From Euprymna scolopes (lineage: Eukaryota), in the NCBI GenBank assembly GCA_053919585.1, contig CM132796.1: a stretch of 64,000 nt of DNA. One strand, given 5' to 3'. Positions within the stretch are counted from its first letter, which is position 1. Every line of letters starts with the position of its first letter. The position numbers and the translations under genes were made by a program. The notes under the pieces were generated by a model. That model made no database searches. It saw only the letters and a program-made list of their open reading frames with translations, and had not been told where the DNA came from. Shown piece after piece: positions 4,392 to 58,113 of this stretch.

Positions 4392-4861
4392 GTGTAGCGT
4401 TTGTTTATCAAAAATGTGGACTTACTCCAAACAAATACAAAAAAAAACAGGCGCTCAAATATTATACACAACAAATGCACACACAAAGGCCATAAAGATA
4501 TATGCATAACATTTCTTGTTCATAGCACAAACAAAACAAGACCAATGCAGTACATTGAGCAGTGAAAATATCAAAGGATACAATCCTCAGTTACAAATTA
4601 AAAGGGTCACTATGACTCAAACTCAAAATTAAGTGGATTTAAAATTAATTCAAACTTTCATATGGAAGTTAATTGACTGGAAAAAGAAGAATAACGTTTA
4701 AAACTATAGTAATATTCTTTCTGAAATGCAACCTAGAAAAAGAGTGGAAACAGAGTTTGAATATACAACTACGTCGGATGTGGGTACACGTCACTAATAT
4801 TACGTGTATCTTCGAAGGAATCAAATAACCAAATGCAAATACGGGCTAAGGCTAAGAAAAG

Positions 4862-5055
4862 TGTTGTATTGTGTTTCGTATGGATACGAAACTTCCCTAT
4901 AGAACTCTCCCTGACGAAAGCGCTAGCTCTGTATACTACTCCAGTAGTGTCTGCCATGTTACTTTATAGTGCTGACGTCGGACCTGACGTATCGTTCTTT
5001 TGTGCTAATAAAAACCTTATTTAAAGGGTATACAGTATTTGTTTTACTTACGACA
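4862..5055 (+). repeat. 5' LTR of element A
   Basis: Direct repeat of 15987-16178; TG...CA ends; contains AATAAA. Confidence 0.95.
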
Positions 5056-5103
5056 ATTTTATTAGCACAAAAGGTTAAAAAAAAAAAGTAAAAGATTTTA
5101 AAA

Positions 5104-7394
5104 ATGGATCGTGCCCTGAGACCTTCTCGATTGGACGTAAACCCTAATTCATCTAATGCCGAGCGAGAGTTTAAGCACTGGTTTGCTACGTTAAAATATT
5201 TTTTAGCGGCACTACCCCAGGAAAATCTCAATAAGTTGTTGGTCCTGATAAATTTTATTTCACCGGATATTTTCGAATATTTCAGCGATTGTGGAAATTA
5301 TAAAGAAGCCTGTCTCAAACTGGAGGAACTCTTTATCAAACCAAAAAAACGAGATATACGCACAGCACCGACCACGCGAGCCTTTTCTAGTCTCACACAA
5401 AAACACGCATTCACATCTCAAGCTATATTACTTGTCATATACATACGCGCACACAAACATATGCGCCATGTCCACACACGTACATATATTCACGCTTGCG
5501 TACATACATTCACATGTATATACACACACGTGAACGTACACACATGTACGCACACATACGCGCACACATACGCACACATGGACAACGTCACTTCCCCTTT
5601 CAAAGGAAATCCACACATGTGCAAAAGACCACTGGAAACAACTATAAAAGCAAGAGTAATAAGCTGCTTCCTCCTTTTTGGACCAGCTCTCGAGCTGAGA
5701 GGTTCGACGAACCAGCCGCCTCTCTTTCGGGAGGCGTGTGCCCGCGCACGTCACGTCCCCTTCTACTGTATGTGGGACAAAAAGCTAACAGACAGTACAT
5801 ACACCTTATACGCTTTCTCTCTCCATGAACTAGATTGACAGTCTCACCCTTTCTCTCTATATATACAACTCGTGCCTGAGAATACTTTCGCATAGCTGAC
5901 TGCTAACATGGCGCACAGCTTTACTGATGTCAACCCTCTATCTTTGTCTTTGTCTACACGCTGGACTATCATTCTCATTTCCACTACATTACTCACTTCT
6001 CTTCCCATGCGCGAACAAACGATAGTGACCCGAACGTGAAATGAACACACATTTCCTTTTCTTTCTACACCACCAGTCCCACAACAAACGATGGTTACAC
6101 CCGAACGCGGACATAAACACGTGTTATACCTAAAACATTCATTTTTCAACAGTAAATAAACGACACGTTTATTTTATCCAGCAATTGAGTTTTTGTTTCC
6201 TTCATTCCATTCGTTTCATTATTTTCTTTTGTAATGGGATTGGGATATATATATATCCTAGTCCTCTACACTACTCGCCACGAGGCGTCAGCAACCGGGA
6301 GAAAGTCTGGACGAGTATCTTCGGGCATTACGAGTCCTTAGCAAGGACTGCAATTTTAGTGACGTCAGCGCGGCAATATACGCTAATGAATCGATTCGGG
6401 ATGCCTTTATTGCCGGAATTCAGCCCCATACCATTTTCCAGCGTTTGTTGGAAAATAAAACGCTCGACCTGGACACTATGTTTGATCAGGCACGAGCGCT
6501 GGACAATGCAACGAGGAATATGGAATCGTATTCACCAGCATACCGGGAACCAAGCGCTGTAGCCCTTGGAAAGGAAGAGACATCAGACTTGGATTTTAAT
6601 CAAATAAACCTAAATGCTGCTAAATCAGAAATTAAATGTTGGAACTGTGGAAATTATAAGCACACAAAATCACGATGTCCAGCGAAATCGAGTGTTTGTC
6701 ATCGATGTAAACGGATCGGGCATTTTGCAAAATGCTGCAAATCAAATAATACTACTCAATCAACTTCTGACTCGGTCCATTATCCAACCTTAGCCTCTAT
6801 AATTTCGAGTTCGGCAGTTCCATCATCTCTACAGAGATCCACCGTAGAAATCAACATTTTGGGTCGGCCATTAAGAGCACTAATGGACAGTGGTAGCTCT
6901 GACAGCTTTATTCATACCAAAGTAGCCGAGGATCTGGATTTAAAAATAACAGATTCGGATTTGAGAGTTTCGATGGCATCGTCTGACCTCTCATTCAAAG
7001 TGGCAGGTGCTTGTTTTCCTAACGTACTTTTTAACAAACGTATGTATCCCAACCAGAAACTGTCAGTTTTAAATAACTTTTGTTGTGATGTGATTCTCGG
7101 ACTGGATTTTCAAAGTAAACATGAAAGCGTTACCTCCAAGTATGGTGGGAGTTCAACTCCTATTGAGATTTGTGGACTCGCTGTGGCTTTGGTGGAACCG
7201 CCTGAACTTTTTATTAATATAAATAAGAACTGCAAACCGGTTGCCACCAAGTCTAGACGTTTTAGCTCGTGATAGCAAGTTCATTAACTGAGAAGTTAAG
7301 TGCTTTTTAAAGGAGGGGATCATCTAAATCTCAACCCCCGCCTGGAGGGCACAAGTAGTCGTGGTTAAATCCGATAATCAGAAAAAGAGAATAG
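5104..7394 (+). pseudogene. Element A gag-protease-RT N-terminus, interrupted by a solo LTR
   Basis: MDRALRPSRLD...KNEIYAQHR | LATRRQQPGESLDEY...; CWNCGNYKH..C, CHRCKRIGHFAKCC; DSGS; PVATKSRRFS; frameshifts and stops. Confidence 0.9.
5373..6270 (+). mobile_element. Solo LTR of family C inserted in gag of A
   Basis: Homologous to the LTRs at 7395 and 8955; ends in TACA; imperfect 4-bp TSD CGAC/CTAC; removing it restores gag (H-R-L-A-T). Confidence 0.85.
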
Positions 7395-9495
7395 TGTGGG
7401 AGCCTTTTCTAGTCTCACACAAAAACACGCATTCATGTCTCAAGCTATATCACTTGTCATATACATACGCGCACACATCCACACACGTACATATATTCAC
7501 GTTTGTGTATATACACTCACATTCACGTGTATACACACATACGCTAACATACACACATGTACGCACACACGTGCACACGTATGCACACATGGACAATGTC
7601 ACTTCCCCTTTCAAAGGAAATCCACACATGCGCAAAAGACCACCGGAAACAACTATAAAAGCAAGAGCAATAAGCAGCATCTTTCTTTTTCGGATCAGCT
7701 CTCGAGCTGAGAGATTCAGCGAATCAGCCACCTTCCGAAAGGGAGGCGCGCGCCCGTGCTTCACACCACTCGCTTCCATGTGGGGCAAAAAGCTAACAAA
7801 CAGTACGTATACTTTATACACTTTCTCTCTCCATGAACTGGATTGACATTCTCACTCTTCCTCTCTCTATATATATACAACTTGTCCCTGAGAATACCTT
7901 TGCATAGCTGACTGCTAACATGTCTTTGTCTACACACTGGACTATCATTTCTCGTTCCACTACATCACTCATTTCTTTTCCCACACACGAACAAACGATA
8001 GTGACCTGAACGTGAGATGAACACACATTTCCTTTTCCTTCTATAACCACAAATCCGGAACAAACCGGCAACCGACCGATGTGAAACGAACAAGCATGGT
8101 GACCTTACCTTTTTGAAATTAATTGTTTTGAGCGAGACACACGTTTTATTTGATAAAGAAAAAAACGAACTTTTCAACAAAAAAAAAACAAAAAAACAAG
8201 TGACCTACTACCGACAAGAACCTCAGCGAACTTGAATGACGAAAACCCTCGTCAGACTCGGCAGAAAAATAAACACGGAGCTGTCGACTTCATACCGAAT
8301 TTTAAAAAAAAAATTTGCTCTCAACAAACATTTTTCACGGTTTCCTGACATTACCCTGCAACAAACGCGAGGAGCTAAATCACATAGGCCTATGCAATTC
8401 TCTCTCGCCCAGCAGACACAACAACAAAAAAACAATTACAGGAATCCCTATCAACACATAGGAAGAAGCTGAATTAACAATGAGTTGAGATGCACCACGC
8501 ACACGGATAAACTCACAACTAGAAGTTTTGTTGACACCGGCAACTGGAAACTCGTTCAACATGAACGAATGCACAACAAACGCCCGTACAGACAATGTAC
8601 ACACACTACCGCGGACTCATTTGCAAAGACACTGTCAACTTGACACATGAAGTCAACACAAAACAAAAATTTTCCTTCCAAACGAATAATTCACTTCATT
8701 GTCCAAGCAACTCGTTGCACATGTCAGCACACAACAAAAAAAACAAACAAAACAAAAGTCAGCCTAAAAAAAAGAGTAAGCGCCTTTTCCATGCATAATA
8801 AATACTTTTTTATGAACACACTCCGTTTTTAACGTTTTTTTAAACAACCACACAAACAGCAAAAAAACAGGACAAGAAGTCAATTGCAGAAAACATTACT
8901 TAAAAAAAAATATGTATACACTGCATATTTTTTCTCTCTTAGGAAGGGAAGTATTGTGGGAGCCTTTTCTAGTCTCATACAAAAACATGCGTTTACATCT
9001 CAAGCTATATTACTTGTCATATACATACGCGCACACAAACATACGCGCCATGTCCACACACGTACATATATTCACGTTCGCATATATACACTCAAATTCA
9101 CGTGTATACACACACACTAACGTACACACATGTACTCACACACGCGCGTACGTCCGCACACATGGACAACGTCACTTCCCCTTTAAAGGAAATCCACACA
9201 TGCGCAAAAGACCACCGGAAACAACTATAAAAGCAAGAAACAAGCTGTTTCCTACCCTTTTCGGACCAGCTCTTGAGCTGAGAAGTTCAAGGAACCAGCC
9301 GCTTCCCTTTCGTCACATCCCCTGCTACTATATCTGTGGGGGCAAGAGTTAACAGACAGTACGTACACCTTACATGTTTTCTATTTCCATGGCCTGGATT
9401 GACTTTTTCTCATTTTATCTCTCTGTCTATACTGCAATAGACGTTCCTTCTCATCAGTAAACAGCGAGAGACGAATGCAGACATGAACACGTATT

Positions 9496-9763
9496 AGTAA
9501 TTGTTTGTATTTTTGAGATGAGGTGTTTTCATTGATTGAGATTGTCGGACTGACTTCCTCATCTTGTTTGTTATCGTCACAACGTTTCGGCCGTTTTACC
9601 CTCCGGCCTTCATCAGGTGTTTTGTATCGAACTGGGGAACCGTTTGTTAGCAGTCTCGAACCCAACCCTTTATTATTATTACGGGGGTACCGTGTTCGGA
9701 CTCCGGCCGAAACATTGTGACATTAACAACCAAGATGAGGAAGTCAGTCCGACAATCTTAATC
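9496..9763 (-). mobile_element. Penelope-like pseudo-LTR fragment with inverted duplication
   Basis: 14-bp direct repeat CATGAACACGTATT (9482-9495/9764-9777); ~55-bp inverted repeat 9540-9593 vs 9704-9757; hammerhead-like core. Confidence 0.75.
9578..9619 (-). ncRNA. Minimal type I hammerhead ribozyme-like motif
   Basis: Minus strand cac-CTGATGA-a-GGCCG(gagggtaaaa)CGGCC-GAAA-CG-TT-gtg; palindromic AACGTT stem III; stem I only 3 bp. Confidence 0.6.
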
Positions 9764-9952
9764 CATGAACACGTATTGTACTCTTTTCTTTCATGTGTTT
9801 CTTCACGAAATAAATTCTAGTCCGTTTAATTCAAATAAACGCGCTGTTCGTTCCTTCCTCAAAGCAATTCATTTTTCCTTTCTCAATGCAATTCATTTTT
9901 CCTATTTTGTACGACTGGGGGATATGTATAATATATCCACCAGTCTGCTACA

Positions 9953-10829
9953 ATAGTCATTCATTATTCTGAGATTGTGAATAAGTACACAAGCCTTGAC
10001 GCCTACCCCCTACCCCGGCTGGATGACGTAGTGAATAAGGTGGCTCAGTATAATGTATTCAGCACAATCGACCTGAAAAATGCGTATCACCAGATCCCCA
10101 TCAATGAGAATGACAAACCCTTCACTGCTTTTGAAGCTAACTCCGGTTTGTATCAGTTCACCCAATACAGCCGCTTCCCATTTGTATACCCTTGTAAAGA
10201 CACAAGTACCCAGAGTGTACTGCAATCTTGGTCCCACCTGTTTTCTATATTAGGCATGCTCAGCCAAGTTCATTCAGATAACGGGAAATTTTTCAAGAGT
10301 GCTGAGTACAAGAATTATATGCACAACAAAGGGATCTCCACCAGCTACAGCACTTCATATCACCCGCAGGGGAATAGTCAAGTGGAACGAATGAATGGAG
10401 CAGTGTGGAAAACTATTTCATTGGCATTGGAAGACTGAACACTGGGAAGAGGTTTTAGCAGACTCCCTCTATTCCGTTCGGTCTTTAATATCCACAGCCA
10501 CAAATGAAACACCTCATGAGCGCCTTTTTATACACCCAAGAAGATCAGTGTCCGGGACAGTGGTACCATCTTGGATGACAGAATCTGGTTTTGTTTTAAT
10601 GCGGAGACACAACCGGTTAACTAAATATGAATTTCTAGTTGATAAGGTTGAACTTCTAGATGCTAACCCCTATTATGCCTTTATTCGATCTAACGAGGGT
10701 AGGCAGATGACTGTATCTACACGTGACTTGGCCCTGTTGAAAGACTTCCAATTCACCAATCACCCACATGACTTGGAAAACTGGAATGATACACCAGCAG
10801 ATCAGCAAGATCAGCACCCCCACCAGTAG
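9953..10829 (+). pseudogene. Element A RT fragment fused to integrase core by internal deletion
   Basis: DAYPLP..DLKNAYHQI..GLYQFT joins in frame to QYSRFPF..HSDNG..YHPQGNSQVERMN; YxDD, RNase H and HHCC are missing. Confidence 0.88.
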
Positions 10830-11036
10830 AACCACCTGTTTTGCGACGGTCAGAATGTAGTAGAAGACCACCAGATGAGTTGAATTTGTGATTCTAGAGG
10901 TTAGTGAATCTTGATTACATTTATTTTGCACATCAGAACTATTAAATCGCACTCCTTGTGCTGGCTGAATTAGTGAGTTTTAACATTGCGACCCTGAACT
11001 ATTAAACTAGAGTCCTTGCATTGGTTGTGATCAACC

Positions 11037-14000
11037 TGTAGGGGATTAAAAATTAGAGGACACCGGGGGAGGAGTAATCTGCCCCTGCTCTAATGCTGGT
11101 TGGTTTTTCCCTTTGGTCACGGGCAGACGTGTTGCGTTTTCCCTCTCAAGGAGAGGAGAACCTTCGTTCCACCACGAGGTGAGCTCTGAGAACTTTTTCC
11201 ACCAAGCGGTGAGTCTTATCGAACTGTCGCTATTGTATTGTGTTTTATTGTTGTTTAAATGTTTGTCAGTGTATAATAAATGTGTAAACGTAATTGGGCA
11301 ATTGTGTTTATTCATATATTTTTTGTTTAGTTAAAACTAACAAATTGGTGACTCAGAGAAAATATATATGTACACGCGCATGCATAATAATAAGTTCTGT
11401 TTAAAAAAAGGTAAAATAATATTTTTATGAACAATAAGAAAAAGTTAGGATGTAAATTTTATTTCTAGAATTCTAATTATTATTCCCTAAATAAAAATTC
11501 GTAGGGTAGCGTAATTAAGATAGCAACACGATTTTTCTTTTATTCTTTACATATTTTTGTCGATAGAATAAGGATAGAACTAGGGTTTTGTTTTAATCGT
11601 GCACAACAAATGCAACAAGTTTTTTTTTTCGAAACTAAATTATCTCTCATAGGAAAATTTCGTTCCTGAAACGGCTGTCGGTATTCCTGTCAAATTCGGC
11701 GCCTGATACAGGATTGGCTGATATGGGCGAGTACGTTGCGTTCTGTCTCTGTGCCCCTTACCCTCCGTGTTGTATTATTACTATTCCTTTCTTTTCATGC
11801 CCTGCTGCTAGAGACTGTTGTAGTTTCCAGTGCGGTAAAATAAATAAATAAATAAATAAATAAATATATTTTTTTAAATGGCGATAACTTGTAATGTTAA
11901 TGCCTCGTTAGTTCGCGATGACCCTGTTTTGTTTTTTGCTCAACTCGATTTATTTTTCAAACAAAAATCGATTGACAACCAGGCAGAGAAATTCTGTTAC
12001 GTCGCATCCATTTTACCTCAGGATAAAATTACTGAGGTAAGAGAGTTAATAATCTCTCCACTTACAGAAAAGCCGTACGATGTACTTAAGGAGAGGGTCA
12101 CGACTGCTGTGACTGCTTCCACACATAAGCGTATTTCGCAGTTGTTGGAACAAGAGATCCTGGGAGATAGCAAGCCGTCCCAATTTCTAAAACGGTTACA
12201 AAAATTAGCTGAAGGTGGAGGGCCAAAAACGGTTGGAAGCCCGTATGGACAGAATGGCGGAAGACATCGCCAGACTATCATTAAAACAGAAGCAGCGACA
12301 TGGCAGTAGAGGAGGTCGCAGCCAGTCCCGGAAACGCAAGCAAGAAGCTATTTCTTGGAAGCACAAGAGATTTGGCGAAAATACCAACTCTTGTATTCCC
12401 CCTTGCAACTATAAGGGACAGGAAAAAGCCTAAACTGACAGATGAGAGCGGCATCAACTGTCGGTGCATCCTGCTCTGGCCGTCTACTTTATGTTGTAGA
12501 TAAAAATACAGGCATCTCGTTTTTGGTGGACAGTGGGGCACAAGTTTCCCTTATCCCGGCAACATCAATGGACAAAAGGTCTCCTCTCTGTAAATTTATC
12601 ATGCGAGCTGTAAACGGTTCGATAATACGGACTTATGGGGAGAGGTGCATGGACCTTAACTTGGGTTTACGCAGATCGTTTATCCACGTTTTCATATTGG
12701 CTGACGTAAGCAGTGCTATACTGGGTACTAACTTTCTGCAAGCATTTGGCCTGGTAGTAGATATGTCAGGCCAGTGTCTCCGAGATCCAAGCACACAACT
12801 TACAGCATGTGGGGTGGTGGGGACTGGCACACCATTAGGTTCACAGGTAGCACATGCAGACCAGGACGAAGCCTTCCTGAGTCTGTTGAAGGAATATCCT
12901 TCAATATCGGTCCCCTCCTTTCACAAGGAAGTGTTACCACACACTGTAACTCATTACATTGAGACAAAAGGCCCACCCGTCCATTGCAAAGCCAGACGTT
13001 TAACACTTGAAAAAATAAAGGCTGCGAAAGCAGAATTTCAGCAGATGATGCAGCTTGGCATAGTTCGTCCTTCAAATAGCGAATGAGCCTCGCCTCTTCA
13101 TCTTGTTAGTAAGAGTCTAAATGCATGGCGGGCATGTGGGGACTAGCGAGCTTTAAATGCCGCTACGAAACCAGATAGGTACCCAGTACCACATATCCAA
13201 GATATAACAACAGTGGCCCAGAATAATAGAGTATTTACTAAATTAGACCTTATTCGGGCATACCACCAGATCCCTGTGGAGCCCGAACATATTCCCAAAA
13301 CGGCAATTACCACACCGTTTGGAATGTTTGAATTTTTGCGTATTCCATTTGGTTTACGCAACGCAGCTCAAATGTTCCAATGTTTTATAGACCAGGTTCT
13401 GCGAGACTTGCCATGTGTGTGTGCATACATAGATGACGTCCTCATTGCTAGCAGGAATAGGCAGGAACACATAGATCATGTGCACCAAGTATTCGATCGC
13501 CTGAACCAATATGGTGTTATTTTAAATTCATCGAAATATACTTTTGGTCAATCTGAGGTTATATTTTTGGGGCACCATATTTCAGAGAAGGGAATTTCTC
13601 CATCCCCAGAGACAGTCAAGTCCATCCGAAATTTCCCTATCCCTGCTACAATGAGACAGTTGCGGCAATTTTTAGGATTAGTTAACTTCTATCGTAGGTT
13701 TCTCCCTCATGTTTCCTAAGTACTTTTTCCATTGACAGGTATGCTGACAAATGTGAAGAACTGCAACATTACACTATCGAAGGAAGCAATAGCAGCATTC
13801 AACAAAGTAAAGGCCATGTTAGAAGACACTGCAAAGCTGTCCCACATTCAACCCGATAGTGAACTTTGCCTGGCAGTAGATGCATCTGCAACTGGAATTG
13901 GAGCGGTTCTGCAGCAAAAATGTAATGGGAACTGGCGACCTATTTCTTTCTTCTCCAGGGAATTGACTGACGCAGAAACACGCTATAGCACATTTTCCAG

Positions 14001-15910
14001 AGAGTTGTTGGCCTCGTTTTCCGCAATAAGACATTATTGGCAGCTCCTAGAGGGACAGCCATTCTACTTGGTGACTGACCACAAGCCTCTATTAGGCGAT
14101 CTGCAGTCCTCCTCAGACAAATACTCTCCCTGAGAGGTTCGTCAGTTTACGTCGGATGTCAGACACGTGAAGGGAGCTGACAATATACCAGCAGATACAC
14201 TGTCACGAGGAATAAACTCCTTCATATTGGGACCTTCGGTCGAAGCTAACATCTTAGCTATGGAGCAAGAAAAAGACGAGCACCTGCAGAAGCTTCTGCA
14301 GAATAATGGAACATCACTGCAGCTGGTGAAAATAGCACACCCCAACAGCCCTAGAAAAATAGTGTGTGATATCAGCACAAACAAACTGCGCTCATATGTT
14401 CCAGCATCCTTAAGGAAAGACATATTCAACGCAGTACACGGGTTATCACACCCAGGGGCCAATGCGTCGATACGTTTGATGACAGACAGGTATGTCTGGC
14501 CGAGGATGAAAGCAGATGTGGGAGAATGGACAAAGAAATGCGTGCAGTGTCAAAAGGCCAAGGTCGGTCGACATACACGTGCACCACTAGGCACATTTCC
14601 AGTACCTGATGAGAGGTTCAAGCACATACACCTCGACATCACCGGTCCATTTCCGACATGTGAAGGCCAATGCTATCTTTTGACATGTGTCGACAGATTT
14701 TCAAGGTGGTTTGAAGCCTTACCAATGCCGAATATGACAGCATACACAACAGCCAGAACTTTCCTCACAGGATGGGTAGTAAGATTTGGTGTCCCGGAAA
14801 ATGTGACAACTGACAGAGGTAGACAGTTCGAGTCCGAACTGTTTCATAAACTCTCAGGACTTTCGGGCACCAGAAGTATACACACGACAGCATACCATCC
14901 ACAAGCAAACGGAGCAGTCGAACATCTACATCGCAGCCTAAAGGCCTCTTTACGCGCAGTGCTTACCAGCAATACAAAGTAGGTAGAATACCTTCCTCTA
15001 ATTTTGCTGGGTTTGCGCACAGCAGTGAAGAAGGATATGAATTGCTCAGCAGCAGAAGCGCTGTATGGTACCACACTACGCCTGCCAGCACAATACTTTT
15101 GTGATACACCAAATAAAGTTTGGGACCCTGCATTATTTGTTGATAAACTGACAAGAACCATGGCCAAAATGGCATATTCTCCATCAGGAATAAACAAGTG
15201 CGCTAACACATATGTGCCAAAGGCACTAGAGACATGCACACATGTGTTTGTTCACGATACAGCTAGGTCGCATACCCTGCAACCACCGTATCGCGGACCT
15301 TTTAAAATCAACAAGAAAAACAAGAAGTATTTCAGCATCCTCATTAAGGACGAAGAACAAAAAATCTCAATTGACAGGTTGAAACTCGCAACACTCGAGG
15401 ATACATATTTAGAAGTAGATCCCTCACAAAGGATGCCAGTCGAAGTGACATTGGAAAAACGCCCTTATAAAAAAAACATGTTCGGGGAGACAGGTGAAAT
15501 GGCCTGCCCATTTAAGAGACTTTGTCTCTACATAAAAAAAACAAAAAAAGCAATCCTCTCACAACATTTAATTAAAAGTACTCCGTTTTTTTTTTGGGGG
15601 GGGGGTTGTAGGGGACTAAAAATTAGAGGACACCGGGGAGGAGTAATCTGCCCCTGCGCTAAGGGTGGTTGGTTTTTCCCTTTGGTCACGGGCAGATGTG
15701 TTGCCTTTCCCTCTCAAGGAGAGGAGAACCTTCGTTCCACCACGAGGTGAGCTCTGAGAACTTTTTCCACCAGTCGGTGAGTCTTACCGAACTGTCGCTA
15801 TTGTATTGTGTTTTATTGTTGTTTAAATGTTTGTCAGTGTATAATAAATGTGTAAACGTAATTGGGCAATTGTGTTTATTCATATATTTTTTGTTTAGTT
15901 AAAACTAACA
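11037..15910 (+). mobile_element. Gypsy element B, CsRn1-type, full length but pseudogenised
   Basis: LTRs 11037-11342 and 15607-15910; TSD AACC; PBS TGGTGAC at 11346 (tRNA-Trp-like); poly-G PPT. Gag with DP.LFFAQ and CHCC-like WKHKRFG..SCIPPC; PR VDSGA; RT YIDD; RH DAS; IN HHCC/DDE; GPF/Y motif PPYRGPF. Confidence 0.95.
11878..15480 (+). pseudogene. Element B gag-pol
   Basis: Consecutive ORFs 11878-12433, 12442-13086, 13213-13719, 13732-14133, 14167-14982 and 15004 onward; the pol pieces are separated by single stop codons. Confidence 0.92.
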
Positions 15911-15986
15911 AACCCACCTTCATACACTTATAGTTGAATGGACTTTCCACCCACGGCAGGAACTTTCTAATTTAATGGAGGGGGAA

Positions 15987-16178
15987 TGTTGTATTGTGTT
16001 TCGTATGGTTACGAAACTTCCCAATAGCACTCTCTCTGATGAAGCGCTAGCTCTGTATAATACTCCAGTAGTGTCCGCCATGTTACTTTAGTGTTGACGT
16101 CGGACCCGACGTATCTTTCTTTTGTGCTAATAAAAAACCTTATTTAAAGGGTATACAGTATTTGTTTTACTTACAACA
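15987..16178 (+). repeat. 3' LTR of element A
   Basis: Follows the PPT and is followed by TSD AAAAG. Confidence 0.95.
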
Positions 16179-16427
16179 AAAAGGTAACTTGTTTTTTCAC
16201 AAACTCTTATTATAACACTGTCCGGTAAGCAAATGGGTATGAACTCGCTATTGAAAATTATCATAAATATCTTCAATGTATAAGAAATCCCATTTTACAA
16301 TAAAATACGAAAGTAATCGTACACATGCGAATTCAACAAGTTTTAGGTAAAGTAGACTTTAACGCATAACACAATATTTAATTTTTTAAGAATTTGTCAC
16401 ATTGTTCGACTTATTTTCATGTAAAAT

Positions 16428-23463: not shown

Positions 23464-24945
23464 ATGGAAAAATACACTGAAACAAATTTAACTAACAAAA
23501 TCTTTAGTATTGCTACTTCACAAACAAATTTGGAATCTGATGCTGGAGAGAAACCATATCGTTCTGAAGAATCTGATTCGTCATTTTCAAAGAACAGTAT
23601 AAAACTACATAAGGAGACAAAGAGATTTGAGAAACCACATTCTTGTGAAGTTTGTGGCTCTTCTTTTACACATAAATCAAATATGTTAAAACATATGCGA
23701 ATACATACTGGAGAAAAACCATATTCTTGTGAAGTATGTGGTACTTCTTTTAAAATGAAACAACATATGGTGCAACACATGCGAACACATACTGGGGAAA
23801 AACCATATTCTTGTGAAATGTGTGATTCCTCATTTGCACAACAATCACACTTGATGCGGCATATACGAACACATACCAGAGAATACCAAACATCAAAATC
23901 CATTATGTTACCACGCAAGCGAATTCATACTCAAAAAATGCAATATACATGTGAAATATGTGACTCATCTTTTACAGATAAATCTAATATGGCGATTCAC
24001 ATGCAAAAACATACAGGAGAGAAACCATATTCTTGTGAATTGTGTGATTCATCTTTTACGTATAAATCCAATATGGTGAAGCACCTAAAGACACATACTG
24101 GAGATAAACCGTTTTCTTGTGAAATATGTGGCTCTTCTTTTATAGATAAATCCAGTATGGTGATGCATACCCGAACACATACTGGAGAGAAACCCTATTC
24201 TTGTGAAGTATGCGGCTCTTCTTTTACACAAAAATCCAATATGTTGCAGCATAAGCGGGCACACACTGAAGGAAAACCATATCCTTGTGAAGTATGTGGC
24301 TTTTCATTTTCACACAAATCTAATCTGTTGAAGCACATACGAACCCATACTGGAGAGAAGCCACATACCTGTGAAGTATGTGGTTCTTCTTTTTCAAACA
24401 AATCTAACATGTTGAAGCATATGATAACACACACTGGCGAGAAACCTTATTCTTGTGAAGTGTGTGGTACTTCTTTTACATTGAAACACCACTTGCTGCA
24501 GCACATGCGAACACATACAGGAGAGAAACCACATTCTTGTGAAATATGTAGCTCTTCTTTTACACAGAAAGCACACTTGCTGCGACACAGGAGAACACAT
24601 ACTGGAGAGAAACCATATTCTTGTGAATTGTGTAGCTCCTGTTTTACAGATAAATACAATATGGCTATTCATATGCGAACACATACTGGAGAGAAACCAT
24701 ATTCTTGTGAAATATGTGGCTCTTCATTTACTCAGAAATCAAGTATGTTGAAACATGTTCGGGCACATACAGGAGAGAAGCCATATTCTTGTGAAGTCTG
24801 TGGCTCTTCTTTTACAGCAAAGCAAAATATGCTGCAACATCTACGTACACATACGGGAGAAAAACCATATTCTTGTGAGGTCTGTGGCTCTTGTTTTTCA
24901 AACAAATCCAATATGACGAAACATAAAAGGATACATAGTTTATAG
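23464..24945 (+). CDS. Tandem C2H2 zinc-finger protein, 15 intact fingers, no effector domain seen
   Basis: 493-aa ORF of CxxC-x12-HxxxH units with HTGEKPY linkers; candidate acceptor TTCAG ending at 23443. Confidence 0.93.
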   Translation: MEKYTETNLTNKIFSIATSQTNLESDAGEKPYRSEESDSSFSKNSIKLHKETKRFEKPHSCEVCGSSFTHKSNMLKHMRIHTGEKPYSCEVCGTSFKMKQHMVQHMRTHTGEKPYSCEMCDSSFAQQSHLMRHIRTHTREYQTSKSIMLPRKRIHTQKMQYTCEICDSSFTDKSNMAIHMQKHTGEKPYSCELCDSSFTYKSNMVKHLKTHTGDKPFSCEICGSSFIDKSSMVMHTRTHTGEKPYSCEVCGSSFTQKSNMLQHKRAHTEGKPYPCEVCGFSFSHKSNLLKHIRTHTGEKPHTCEVCGSSFSNKSNMLKHMITHTGEKPYSCEVCGTSFTLKHHLLQHMRTHTGEKPHSCEICSSSFTQKAHLLRHRRTHTGEKPYSCELCSSCFTDKYNMAIHMRTHTGEKPYSCEICGSSFTQKSSMLKHVRAHTGEKPYSCEVCGSSFTAKQNMLQHLRTHTGEKPYSCEVCGSCFSNKSNMTKHKRIHSL

Positions 24946-25519
24946 AAACGATATTCTTGTGAAATATGTGGATTTTGTTTTGCACAAAAATGAATTGTGG
25001 TACAGCACAAGTGAATGCATACTCGTAAGTGTCCCTAATATTGTTGGGATTAACAGAGATGAGAGCAAAAAGATAACGAAATACCAAAATCTTATGTACA
25101 ACATAAAAAGAAACTGGAATCTTAGGAAAATCTCTATCATTCTAGTACTTTTATAGGAGCAACCAGGCTCATGAAATTGCATTTTAAAAACTACCTGGCA
25201 AATATACCCGATAAATCAAGTGCAAGTGAGACACAAACATTTGCACTTAACTTACTGAACAATTAATAAAAAATAAAGAAACTACATATTTGTAAAATAT
25301 ATTGCTTTTCTTTCAAACTAATGAATTATGTTGACATATATGTAGTAGAAAGAAACTATTCTTGTTGAATTTTCTCTCGCAGAAATCAATGTTTATGTAT
25401 ATAATAAATTATAATGAAATCTAAGCTGATATACAATGTCAATTCAAGATTAGAAAATATTGAATTAATAAAAACTTGAAAAGCTTTTAAATAGAAATAA
25501 AAGTGCCGAGAACTGTTGT

Positions 25520-25642: not shown

Positions 25643-26191
25643 TTTTTAAATCGAATAAAATCCAATGATTACCGTATACTTTATGACTAAAGACTTACGC
25701 TAAAATATATAAATGGATCGTGCAGTTGCTTTTATCGTATTGTTTTTACATTCTCATGTTATATAATAGAACGCTCTCGTGTTATTTTTATATTTGAGTA
25801 ATAGTATGTGTACAATGTATATTATATTCCCAAAAATGGATGTTTATTTGAAAATTAATTTGCATATTATTGAGATCATTCCTTTCATTTGTTGATATTA
25901 CATATTAAACGTATTTTTATAAGAAATAAATATAATTTACAAATGAAAAAAATGTTAATCTTAAATGAAGTTGATTTCTACAGAACATGATTATGTGACC
26001 AATATATGTTGTAATGGGTTATATGTACTTGTAAGCACAATTCGAGTGCTAAACAATCCTCAATTCTTTTATCTTTATAATAAAGTAAAGTACACTTTTC
26101 TTTTCTTTGTTTGTTTTATTCCTATTCTAAATTTCTTACATTTCTCAGTCATACAACTTCTTTCAACGAAGTCATTTGTACATAAATCGAG

Positions 26192-26662
26192 GGTATTTTC
26201 ACTCTCATACTAAGATGTACTACACCAATATTACACCGAAATTATTTGCATGGAAATTTCTTTGGTATTTTCACTCTCACACCAATATTACACCGAAATT
26301 ATTTGCATGGAAATTTCTTTGGTATTTTCACTCTCACACCAATATTACACCGAAATTATTTGCATGGAAATTTCTTTGGTATTTTCACTCTCACACCAAT
26401 ATTACACCGAAATTATTTACATGGAAATTTCTTTGGTATTTTCACTCTCACGCCAATATTACACCGAAATTATTTGCATGGAAATTTCTTTGGTATTTTC
26501 ACTCTCACACCAATATTACACCGAAATTATTTGCATGGAAATTTCTTTGGTATTTTCACTCTCACACCAATATTACAGCGAAATTATTTGCATGGAAATT
26601 TCTTTGGTATTTTCACTCTCACACCAATATTACACCGAAATTATTTGCATGGAAATTTCTTT
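26192..26662. repeat. 57-bp tandem repeat, about 8 near-identical units
   Basis: Unit GGTATTTTCACTCTCACACCAATATTACACCGAAATTATTTGCATGGAAATTTCTTT; only 3 substitutions seen among the repeated units. Confidence 0.97.
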
Positions 26663-27527
26663 GAGCATAACACAGTTTTACTTTCATTTGTGCCTGTCAT
26701 GTACTCTATATTTTTATCCTAAATAATCATATCTGTTTCAAGCTCAGGTGTTCCGTTTTTATTAAAATTGCTTTCCTTCAAATAGCAATTTATAATAATT
26801 TTTCAGTTTTTCCACATTATCCGATTCATATGACAACGCAAAAATATAATTACAGAGTCATGCAAAATAAATTAAGTTTCTTGTTGAGATCTTTTTTTCT
26901 TCTTCATAATTAGAAAGACTATTTGAAAATAGCAGATTATGCTTCATTTATATTCGAACAACAAACATGGTCTCTGATTTACAAATGCAGCCTGTAAGGC
27001 CTTTTCTAAACAATTTTTATTTTAGTTCATTCTTTTAGTTATTGTTTTAATTCGACTTCTATGACAAATATTCAACTAAACATTATTTTGGTAATATTTT
27101 CATTCATTTGCAAATTAAGCAATATATATGTATCTAATTATTATTACAAGTGTATTTTTTTATAAAATAACTTCCATATACAAACATGGTTTCTTTATTA
27201 ATGTATCTTTTAAAATTGAGACGTCTTTAAAACAAAAATATTTTAATTACTATTGATGATTCGTATTTCTCATCTACATTTTTATTCTACATGTTAGCAT
27301 TGACTTTCACTTTGGATAAGAAGGTTTCTGTGTTTGTAGGTTAGGGGTTGGAAAAAATGGAAACGACGCCAACCCGATGCGGAATTAACTGACTTCTTCC
27401 AAGGAGGAAGTTCCATGGAAGTATGAAATTCACAAGTGGTCCCCAGTCGCATGTATATCCCCGTCAGGGGAGATGACGACATTAGGTTTTTGCAACTCTT
27501 GCAGGGAGGTGTCTAGAATTTACAAAT

Positions 27528-57237: not shown

Positions 57238-58113
57238 TTACGCAAATAATGATTCTTTCTTTTTGTGAGTTTGCATGTGCCTTTTTAAAGTTGATTTCAC
57301 TGTAAATGCTGAGCCACACACTTCACAAGAAAAAGGTTTTTCTCCAGTGTGTGTTCGCATGTGTGTCTGCAAGTTTGATGTGTTTGAAAACGAAGAACCA
57401 CATACTTCACAGCTGTGAGGTTTTTCTCCAGTGTGTGTCCGCATATGAATCTTTAAGTTTGATGTCATTGTAAACGACGAGCCACACAATTCGCAAGAAT
57501 ATGGTTTCTCTCCAGTATGAGTTCGCATGTGCAGTTTTGCCTGTGCCGATGTTGCAAAAACTGCACTGCACATTTCGCAAGGATAAGGTTTGTATCCAGT
57601 GTGTGTTTGCATATGGCGTTTTAAATTTGATTTTTCTGAGAAGGAAAAATCACATACTTCACAAGCATGAGGTTTTTCTCCAATGTGAATTCGCATATGT
57701 TTCGTCAATGCTGACGTCATTGAAAATGCAGAACCACATACTTCACACGAGTATGGTTTTTCTCCTGTGTGAGTTCGCAAGTGATTCTTTAATGTTGACG
57801 TCATTGAAAATGAAGCTTTGCACACGTGACAAGAATAAGGTTTCTCGCCAGTGTGTGTTCTCATGTGGACTTGCAGACTATATTTCCTTGCAAATGCTGA
57901 GTCACACACCTGACATGGATAAGCGTTCTCTACAACATGTGTGCGCATGTGTTTCTGAAAGAGTGCTATCACTGTAAATGTTAATCCACACTCTTTGCAG
58001 GAAATATTTTCTCCATTGTGTGATCGCATATGAATTTGTAAGTTCGATTTTTTCGGAAACGATGCTCCACAAATTATACATGAAACAGGTTTGTCTCCAG
58101 TTTGCATGTGCAT
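57238..58113 (-). CDS. Tandem C2H2 zinc-finger protein, 10 intact fingers
   Basis: 291-aa ORF with HTGEKP linkers; candidate acceptor TTCGCAG near 58213. Confidence 0.92.
   Translation of the reverse strand: MHMQTGDKPVSCIICGASFPKKSNLQIHMRSHNGENISCKECGLTFTVIALFQKHMRTHVVENAYPCQVCDSAFARKYSLQVHMRTHTGEKPYSCHVCKASFSMTSTLKNHLRTHTGEKPYSCEVCGSAFSMTSALTKHMRIHIGEKPHACEVCDFSFSEKSNLKRHMQTHTGYKPYPCEMCSAVFATSAQAKLHMRTHTGEKPYSCELCGSSFTMTSNLKIHMRTHTGEKPHSCEVCGSSFSNTSNLQTHMRTHTGEKPFSCEVCGSAFTVKSTLKRHMQTHKKKESLFA

What the first reader, a model, noticed from the sequence alone, without database searches (positions are those of the whole stretch)
4960..5075. Element A has no tRNA PBS; the PBS position is complementary to its own LTR (candidate self-priming)
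Seen: the 5' LTR ends at CA (5055). After one A comes TTTTATTAGCACAAAAG (5057-5073), the exact 17-nt reverse complement of LTR bases 4997-5013 (CTTTTGTGCTAATAAAA, covering the poly(A) signal). There is no TGG. A TTTATA box lies ~30 nt upstream of 4997, and a CCTT..AAGG hairpin follows the complementary segment. Known: Tf1/sushi chromoviruses prime minus-strand DNA from the 5' end of their own RNA after RNase H cleavage. Inference: this animal Gypsy lineage, with CCHC gag and no visible chromodomain, primes the same way with a longer primer. I cannot verify whether this lineage has already been reported as self-priming.
Basis: partly seen in the sequence, partly recalled or inferred. Interest (0 to 1): 0.85.

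Follow-up and report, generated by a model that had tools for sequence, protein, structure and literature searches.

The report
Retrotransposon that likely primes itself
A decayed jumping gene has, where the usual tRNA landing site should be, a 17-letter match to its own end repeat; 14 related families in this genome, insects and a worm keep the match with different letters, so the group probably starts copying itself with its own RNA.

Summary
Window 5057-5073, one base after the 5' LTR end, is the perfect reverse complement of LTR bases 4997-5013, which end in the AATAAA signal. There is no TGG-type tRNA site.

Element A (4862-16178) is a dead, insertion-riddled copy of a compact ~4.1 kb Ty3/gypsy family. 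I examined 15 families at 46-72% protein identity: five in this genome, plus moths, an aphid, a damselfly, Trichuris and unnamed assemblies. All share one layout: LTR ending CA, one A, then 12-19 nt complementary to an LTR segment. That segment ends at the poly(A) hexamer in 14 of 15.

The letters differ between families and change in step. In the inner 12 pairs, 143 of 144 cells pair; 9 pairs show changes on both sides; no shuffle reached the observed score. A hairpin abuts the arm in most predicted folds.

This supports Tf1-like self-priming in a lineage that lacks a chromodomain and is no closer to Tf2 than to other gypsy lineages. The transcription start and the cleavage were not shown. 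I found no published report.

First readers of this scan flagged the same idea elsewhere in this genome (s1-295548, s1-280699, s1-263324; BEL/Pao s1-244822).

The parts
4857..4861 (.). Target-site duplication AAAAG, 5' copy (the 3' copy is at 16179-16183)
   Evidence: the same 5 nt flank the two LTRs.
4862..5055 (+). 5' LTR of element A, 194 bp, TGTTG...GACA
   Evidence: Alignment with the 3' LTR. At least 40 genomic copies at 91-94% identity.
4963..4969 (+). TATA-like TTTATAG, 28-34 nt upstream of the arm
   Evidence: Kept in 27 of 29 family copies. The 3' LTR of the window copy has lost TA here.
4997..5013 (+). LTR arm and putative self-primer; contains AATAAA at 5007-5012
   Evidence: Exact complement of 5057-5073. 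The homologous arm covaries with the leader across families.
5014..5029 (+). Hairpin ACCUU/AGGGU abutting the 3' end of the arm, analogous to the Tf1 U5-IR stem-loop
   Evidence: Present in the minimum-energy fold. A hairpin abuts the arm in most of the 12 family folds.
5056..5056 (+). Single unpaired A between the LTR end (CA) and the PBS-position arm
   Evidence: Present in all 15 families.
5057..5073 (+). PBS-position arm, complementary to 4997-5013, with no TGG
5104..5369 (+). Start of gag, cut off by an inserted repeat at about 5368
   Evidence: ORF list and collinearity with the 4.1 kb copy L031.
6271..7392 (+). gag end (CCHC knuckle) and aspartic protease segment
   Evidence: Pfam Asp_protease_2 E=2e-9 and a weak zf-CCHC hit. 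Matches L031 605-1727.
9952..11034 (+). RT fragment joined to an integrase fragment; about 1.1 kb of RT-RH-IN is deleted relative to L031
   Evidence: Pfam RVT_1 and rve hits in one ORF. BLAST blocks 1725-1942 and 3075-3959 of L031.
15911..15986 (+). 3' internal end with polypurine tract GGAGGGGGAA at 15977-15986
15987..16178 (+). 3' LTR, about 94% identical to the 5' LTR; arm copy at 16119-16135

Best explanation
Element A belongs to a clade of compact Ty3/gypsy retrotransposons (3.8-4.3 kb, LTRs 137-234 bp, one gag-PR-RT-RH-IN frame of about 1190-1254 aa). I propose that these elements start minus-strand DNA synthesis with a piece of their own RNA rather than a host tRNA.

Shown here: the RNA segment that ends at the poly(A) hexamer in R (4997-5013 in the window) can pair with the leader that begins one unpaired A after U5 (5057-5073). 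This pairing is conserved through compensatory changes, and a hairpin sits next to it in most predicted folds.

Inferred: the element's RNase H cuts the RNA just after the hexamer, as Tf1 cuts after base 11. The freed 3'-OH is extended through the A and U5 to the new 5' end. The short strong-stop DNA (about 43 nt in family A) then transfers to the 3' R through the 15-30 nt between the hexamer and the poly(A) site. Plus-strand strong-stop synthesis copies the RNA primer, so the PBS is rewritten from R at every cycle. That would explain why arm and PBS diverge together between families.

Pairing may also hide the 5' copy of the poly(A) signal.
For: 1. Position. In all 15 families the complementary leader starts exactly one A after the LTR's terminal CA, which is where a primer's 3' end must sit. 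LTR ends are confirmed by 5-bp target duplications in several copies.
2. Strength. Ungapped Watson-Crick runs are 12-19 nt, against at most 9-11 nt for 2000 random internal 30-mers per element.
3. Covariation on alignment A3 (12 families). For 19 named pairs, 86.4% of cells pair against 66.6% in shuffles (0 of 500 reach it). The covariation score is 0.524 against 0.159, and slid registers give 38-49%. In the inner 12 pairs, 143 of 144 cells pair and 9 pairs change on both sides. RNAalifold independently predicts the same 13-bp stem. AATAAA/TTTATT switches to ATTAAA/TTTAAT together in moth, Pieris, aphid, L060, L061-63 and L064.
4. All 12 leaders fold into the long stem, with z-scores of -2.2 to -8.0. 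A hairpin abuts the arm in most.
5. No TGG-type site exists, and the PBS letters differ between families, so one shared host RNA cannot fit them all. The nested BEL/Pao-like element in the same window does have TGGTGACTCAGAG and shows at most a 6-nt run to its own LTR.
6. Copy L051 has both LTRs deleted from a GCCC in U3 up to the GCCC right after AATAAA. That junction occurs nowhere else in the 5.9 Gb genome. This is what a strong-stop DNA ending right after the hexamer would give on a mis-transfer.
7. In L059 the arm ends in GTTAAA and a separate AATAAA lies unpaired downstream. The pairing is therefore kept even where it does not cover the canonical signal.
8. The Tf1 precedent is documented in PMC7175516 and PMC4600332.
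Against: No transcription start was measured, and RNA runs were available only as contigs. TATA-like boxes fit a start near the arm in family A and L059 but sit too far upstream or too close in L060 and the aphid element, so the arm may not be the extreme 5' end. RNA-duplex cleavage by this RNase H is untested. The L051 deletion is a single event. The stem would also serve as a poly(A)-occlusion or translation switch.
Confidence: 0.75

Rival explanations
1. The stem is only a regulatory RNA structure. It hides the 5' copy of the poly(A) signal, or gates translation or packaging near the gag AUG. Priming would be done by some other molecule.
For: In 14 of 15 families the arm ends exactly at the poly(A) hexamer. 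The leader arm lies 0-30 nt before the gag AUG and overlaps it in L058. From my own knowledge, retroviruses use comparable 5' structures, such as the HIV-1 poly(A) hairpin and U5-AUG pairing.
Against: The LTR boundary fixes the primer's 3' end at the base before 5056-5057, so any primer must anneal exactly where the stem's 3' strand lies. No other PBS candidate exists in the 16-48 nt before the AUG. L059 keeps the pairing while its canonical AATAAA is left unpaired. Occlusion and priming are not mutually exclusive.
Confidence: 0.12
2. The primer is element-derived but works differently from Tf1. It could be supplied in trans by a second genomic RNA in the particle, or by a short promoter-proximal transcript, with its 3' end made by a host nuclease.
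For: The same covariation is expected under this model. Predicted promoters in some families would put extra bases 5' of the arm.
Against: No known process ends an RNA right at AAUAAA, since polyadenylation cleaves 10-30 nt downstream. The abutting hairpin resembles the Tf1 structure needed for cis cleavage (PMC7175516).
Confidence: 0.1
3. A host small RNA, such as an internal tRNA fragment or a mitochondrial tRNA, primes at 5057-5073, and the match to the LTR is incidental.
For: Half-tRNA priming exists in copia-type elements (PMC6317226). I could not compare the site with the host tRNA set.
Against: The 15 families have 15 different PBS sequences sharing only TTTAWT, and each matches its own LTR. 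None starts with TGG. The chance of the observed runs is negligible.
Confidence: 0.03

Closest known systems
Tf1/Tf2 of Schizosaccharomyces pombe and the Tf1/sushi group (self-priming)
   Same: There is no tRNA PBS, the PBS is complementary to a segment of the element's own LTR-derived 5' RNA, a stem-loop lies between primer and PBS, and gag-pol is a single frame. In Tf1 the first 11 bases pair with the PBS and RNase H cuts between bases 11 and 12 (PMC7175516).
   Different: The duplex here is 12-19 nt and ends at the poly(A) hexamer. The integrase has no chromodomain. RT-RH identity to Tf2 is 27%, no higher than to 17.6, opus, gypsy or 412 at 31%. The hosts are a probable mollusc, insects and a nematode. 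The start site and the cleavage are not shown.
Tj1 of S. japonicus; plant Tcn1 clade and TAR (Ty1/copia) elements with predicted self-priming
   Same: Self-priming is inferred from LTR-PBS complementarity alone (PMC4600332, PMC6317226).
   Different: These are different lineages and kingdoms. The papers I read do not describe a link to the poly(A) hexamer.
Mag lineage of Ty3/gypsy (Mag, SURL, Steamer, mosquito Mag families)
   Same: These are compact 4-5 kb elements with short LTRs of about 140-220 bp, often a single ORF, and CCHC knuckles. Element A's LTR termini fit the published Mag A motifs TGTTRKR...AYAACA (PMC3601003). Relatives carry the automatic name 'K02A2.6-like', which PMC8905726 links to Mag-lineage (C-clade) elements.
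   Different: Described Mag elements have tRNA-Leu or tRNA-Ser sites, for example Steamer's TGGTGTCAGAAG (PMC8905726, PMC3286476) and tRNA-Asn in MchSLE1 (PMC11046912). The clade studied here has none.

Membership tests
Self-priming LTR retrotransposons (mechanistic class defined by Tf1) | No tRNA-type PBS next to the 5' LTR | tested here: met
   There is no TGG between 5056 and the ATG at 5104. The same holds in all 15 families.
Self-priming LTR retrotransposons (mechanistic class defined by Tf1) | PBS complementary to the element's own LTR/R sequence | tested here: met
   17 nt in the window and 12-19 nt in the 15 families, with covariation.
Self-priming LTR retrotransposons (mechanistic class defined by Tf1) | The complementary segment is the 5' end of the transcript | tested here: inconclusive
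   RNA runs were held only as contigs and gave no read starts. TATA spacing fits in family A and L059 but not in L060 or the aphid element.
Self-priming LTR retrotransposons (mechanistic class defined by Tf1) | Stem-loop between primer and PBS (U5-IR-like) | tested here: met
   A hairpin abuts the arm in most of the 12 minimum-energy folds.
Self-priming LTR retrotransposons (mechanistic class defined by Tf1) | RNase H cleavage of the RNA duplex creates the primer | not testable with these tools
   This needs biochemistry or sequencing of strong-stop DNA.
Tf1/sushi phylogenetic clade (chromoviruses) | Chromodomain at the integrase C-terminus | tested here: not met
   Pfam finds PR, RT, RNase H, H2C2 and rve domains only in three intact ORFs. 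The C-terminal tails are low-complexity with a basic motif.
Tf1/sushi phylogenetic clade (chromoviruses) | RT-RH closest to Tf1/Tf2 or sushi | tested here: not met
   Foldseek against Swiss-Prot gives 17.6, opus, gypsy and 412 at 31%, Ty3 at 29-30%, Tf2 at 27% and RTL1 at 17-19%. This is an identity ranking, not a tree.
Ty3/gypsy (Metaviridae) | Domain order PR-RT-RH-IN, with RT closest to Ty3/gypsy | tested here: met
   The best solved structure is the Ty3 Gag-Pol polyprotein at E=2e-71.
Mag lineage | Groups with Mag, SURL or Steamer in an RT-RH-IN tree | not testable with these tools
   No reference sequences could be fetched. The only indirect support is the 'K02A2.6-like' names of relatives (PMC8905726) and the LTR-end motifs (PMC3601003).
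Mag lineage | tRNA-Leu or tRNA-Ser PBS, as reported for described members | tested here: not met
   None of the 15 families has a TGG-type site, in contrast to PMC3286476 and PMC8905726.

The most novel reading that the evidence does not exclude
A clade of non-chromoviral gypsy elements spread across protostomes uses one RNA element for two jobs. The poly(A) hexamer is the 3' end of a capped self-primer, and the PBS masks that hexamer at the 5' end only. Because the PBS is re-copied from R at each cycle, arm and PBS evolve in concert. Self-priming would then be an old and widespread strategy in animals, not a Tf1/sushi peculiarity.
Probability: 0.35. Interest if true: 0.72.

Novelty: new variant of a known kind. 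Interest (0 to 1): 0.62.

Why it matters
Self-priming has been demonstrated only for Tf1. It has been inferred for the Tf1/sushi group, Tj1 and some plant lineages. A second, unrelated animal gypsy clade with the same logic would show that independence from tRNA primers arose repeatedly or is ancient. It would also explain why PBS-based annotation tools miss or misjudge these abundant elements. Several families (S1-S3 here, and elements in Pieris, Ischnura and an aphid) have intact reading frames and nearly or fully identical LTRs, so the idea can be tested directly. The tie to the poly(A) hexamer is a concrete new prediction about how very short LTRs combine promoter, primer and terminator.

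Tried and rejected
- RNA evidence for the start site. The look-up of sequencing runs found the young sister family S1 in two poly(A)/oligo-dT RNA libraries and about 17 other runs, but all are held as contigs. Read laying showed contig breaks caused by differences between copies, with no read starts and no poly(A) ends.
- Linear Logan contigs as proxies for transcripts. Most are circular graph walks containing one whole LTR (L054, L061, L062, L064). The linear one (L063) starts inside the hexamer, but that cannot be interpreted.
- Host tRNA comparison. ARAGORN found no tRNA in the window or in 29 loci.
- Reference-based RT phylogeny. No tool could supply Tf1, sushi, Mag or Steamer sequences, so I used Foldseek identities to Swiss-Prot entries instead. 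The K02A2.6 row there (14%, rmsd 26) is a poor structural alignment and I ignored it.
- Covariation within family A. I rejected this as evidence because the copies differ only by decay after insertion.
- Promoter motifs as a stand-in for the start site. These were inconsistent between families.
- Literature. Eight full-text searches found no report of self-priming in Mag-like or other non-chromoviral animal gypsy elements. Tubio et al. 2005 (doi 10.1093/molbev/msh251) is not in the library and could not be read, and older subscription papers were not searchable.

Full report
**What is at the site**

Reading 4400-5400 and a pattern search confirm the finding. Bases 4997-5013 (CTTTTGTGCTAATAAAA) and 5057-5073 are exact reverse complements. 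About 0.06 such matches are expected by chance in the window. The only other copy is at 16119-16135.

Aligning the two ends with the 3' sequence defines element A:
- 5' LTR at 4862-5055 (194 bp, TGTTG...GACA) and 3' LTR at 15987-16178, about 94% identical.
- Polypurine tract GGAGGGGGAA at 15977-15986.
- 5-bp target duplication AAAAG on both sides.

The complementary leader therefore starts after a single A that follows the LTR's terminal CA, which is the place a minus-strand primer must occupy. No TGG occurs before the gag ATG at 5104.

**The window copy is a wreck**

Pfam and ORF scans and comparison with other copies show that the family is a compact ~4.1 kb Ty3/gypsy element with one gag-PR-RT-RH-IN frame. 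The window copy carries:
- inserted repeats at about 5368-6270 and 7393-9951;
- a ~1.1 kb internal deletion;
- a nested BEL/Pao-like element at 11037-15910.

At least 40 copies of the LTR plus leader exist in the 5.9 Gb genome at 91-94% identity. The ten full copies I fetched all have stop codons. Fifteen of 28 copies still have a perfect 17/17 duplex, and the rest have 1-3 changes. This is decay after insertion and is not evidence of selection.

**The comparative test**

Searching the genome with a natural PR-RT open frame found sister families at 46-49% identity with intact frames of about 1225-1260 aa. I fetched four of these families (S1-S3 from the genome; S4 from a Logan contig).

A protein search found full-length relatives at about 50% identity in Loxostege, Pieris, Hyposmocoma, Macrosiphum, Ischnura and Trichuris, and in many unnamed assemblies. 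I fetched ten of their loci.

All 15 families have the same layout: LTR ending in CA, one A, then a leader complementary to an LTR segment for 12-19 nt. That segment ends exactly at the poly(A) hexamer in 14 of 15. Further points:
- The three apparent bulges (S3, S4, L060) are one-base differences in the length of T runs.
- The arm letters differ in every family. Examples are GAGGATTTAGTTCAATAAA in S1, AATTTTATGTTGAATAAA in S2 and ATTCTTGCTGAATAAA in the damselfly.
- Families that use ATTAAA have TTTAAT in the leader.

Statistics:
- On alignment A3, 19 named pairs give 86.4% paired cells against 66.6% in shuffles (0 of 500 reach it). The covariation score is 0.524 against 0.159, and slid registers give 38-49%.
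- In the inner 12 pairs, 143 of 144 cells pair, and 9 pairs show changes on both sides.
- RNAalifold independently predicts the same 13-bp stem.
- Every leader folds into this stem, with z-scores of -2.2 to -8.0. A short hairpin abuts the arm's 3' end in most.
- Random internal 30-mers never reach the observed runs, except against the mutated 5' LTR of the Trichuris copy, whose leader matches its 3' LTR for 16 nt.
- As an internal control, the nested BEL/Pao-like element has an ordinary TGGTGACTCAGAG site and no LTR complementarity.

**Mechanism**

Two things are shown: a conserved, covarying RNA duplex between the hexamer-terminated R segment and the PBS position, and the absence of any tRNA-type site.

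The rest is inferred by analogy with Tf1, in which the first 11 bases pair with the PBS and RNase H cuts between bases 11 and 12 (PMC7175516):
1. RNase H cuts right after the hexamer.
2. The 3'-OH is extended through the spacer A and U5.
3. The strong-stop DNA transfers through the short remainder of R.
4. The plus strand copies the RNA primer, which would rewrite the PBS from R each cycle and so produce the observed concerted change.

Two observations fit this model. In copy L051, both LTRs lack everything from a GCCC in U3 to the GCCC immediately after AATAAA, and this junction is unique in the genome. That is the expected product of a strong-stop DNA that ends right after the hexamer and transfers to the wrong place. 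In L059 the pairing is kept on a GTTAAA-ending arm while a canonical AATAAA lies unpaired downstream, which argues against poly(A) masking as the only function.

The transcription start is unknown. RNA libraries contain the S1 family, but only as contigs, and promoter motifs are inconsistent between families.

**Classification**

The domain order, and Ty3 as the best solved relative (E=2e-71), place the clade in Ty3/gypsy. It is not in Tf1/sushi:
- There is no chromodomain.
- There are two CCHC knuckles.
- RT-RH identity is 27% to Tf2, against 29-31% to 17.6, opus, gypsy, 412 and Ty3.

Indirect signs point towards the Mag lineage: compact size, short LTRs, LTR-end motifs (PMC3601003) and the 'K02A2.6-like' names of relatives (PMC8905726). 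However, described Mag elements use tRNA-Leu, tRNA-Ser or tRNA-Asn (PMC3286476, PMC8905726, PMC11046912). I could not build a reference tree.

**Novelty**

Self-priming is known or predicted for Tf1/sushi, Tj1, the plant Tcn1 clade and TAR copia elements (PMC6317226, PMC4600332, PMC6934838). Eight full-text searches found no report for this animal clade and no report of a primer that ends at the poly(A) hexamer. Older subscription papers could not be checked.

First readers of this scan noted similar candidates elsewhere in this genome.

Noticed in passing
window 11037-15910: A BEL/Pao-like element (DUF7041 gag, PR, RT, IN) is nested in element A. Its ~305 bp LTRs are about 99% identical over most of their length, its target duplication is AACC, and an ordinary TGG-type PBS (TGGTGACTCAGAG) lies 3 nt after its LTR. 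It shows no LTR-PBS complementarity, unlike the BEL/Pao families noted elsewhere by the scan.
   Followed up: partly
window 5368-6270, 7393-8065, 8952-9430: Three copies (74-97% alike) of a ~700 bp repeat are inserted in element A. Each has a CA/CG-rich low-complexity head and a conserved tail. The type of repeat was not determined.
   Followed up: no
L051 (G000:C46:171107100-171112700): This S1-family copy has an open frame, but both LTRs lack about 98 bp, including the arm and AATAAA. The deletion junction is unique in the genome, which suggests an aberrant strand transfer.
   Followed up: partly
L041 2353 to 5280: One contig from an oligo-dT RNA run joins these positions across a GT..AG gap, skipping 2926 nt of pol. 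This may be a spliced subgenomic RNA of the S1 family.
   Followed up: no
G000:C11:1.68-2.16 Mb: A very large cluster of tRNA genes, with at least 60 Rfam tRNA hits of 64-80 bits, nearly all on one strand.
   Followed up: no
window 23526-25055, 26108-26777, 57264-58040: Tandem arrays with 84-bp units (two places) and 57-bp units (99% identical core copies).
   Followed up: no
L056 (Trichuris suis KL367573.1): The relative in this nematode carries an internal 1.5 kb tandem duplication covering RT-IN. Its PBS matches the 3' LTR arm for 16 nt, while the 5' LTR arm has one change.
   Followed up: partly
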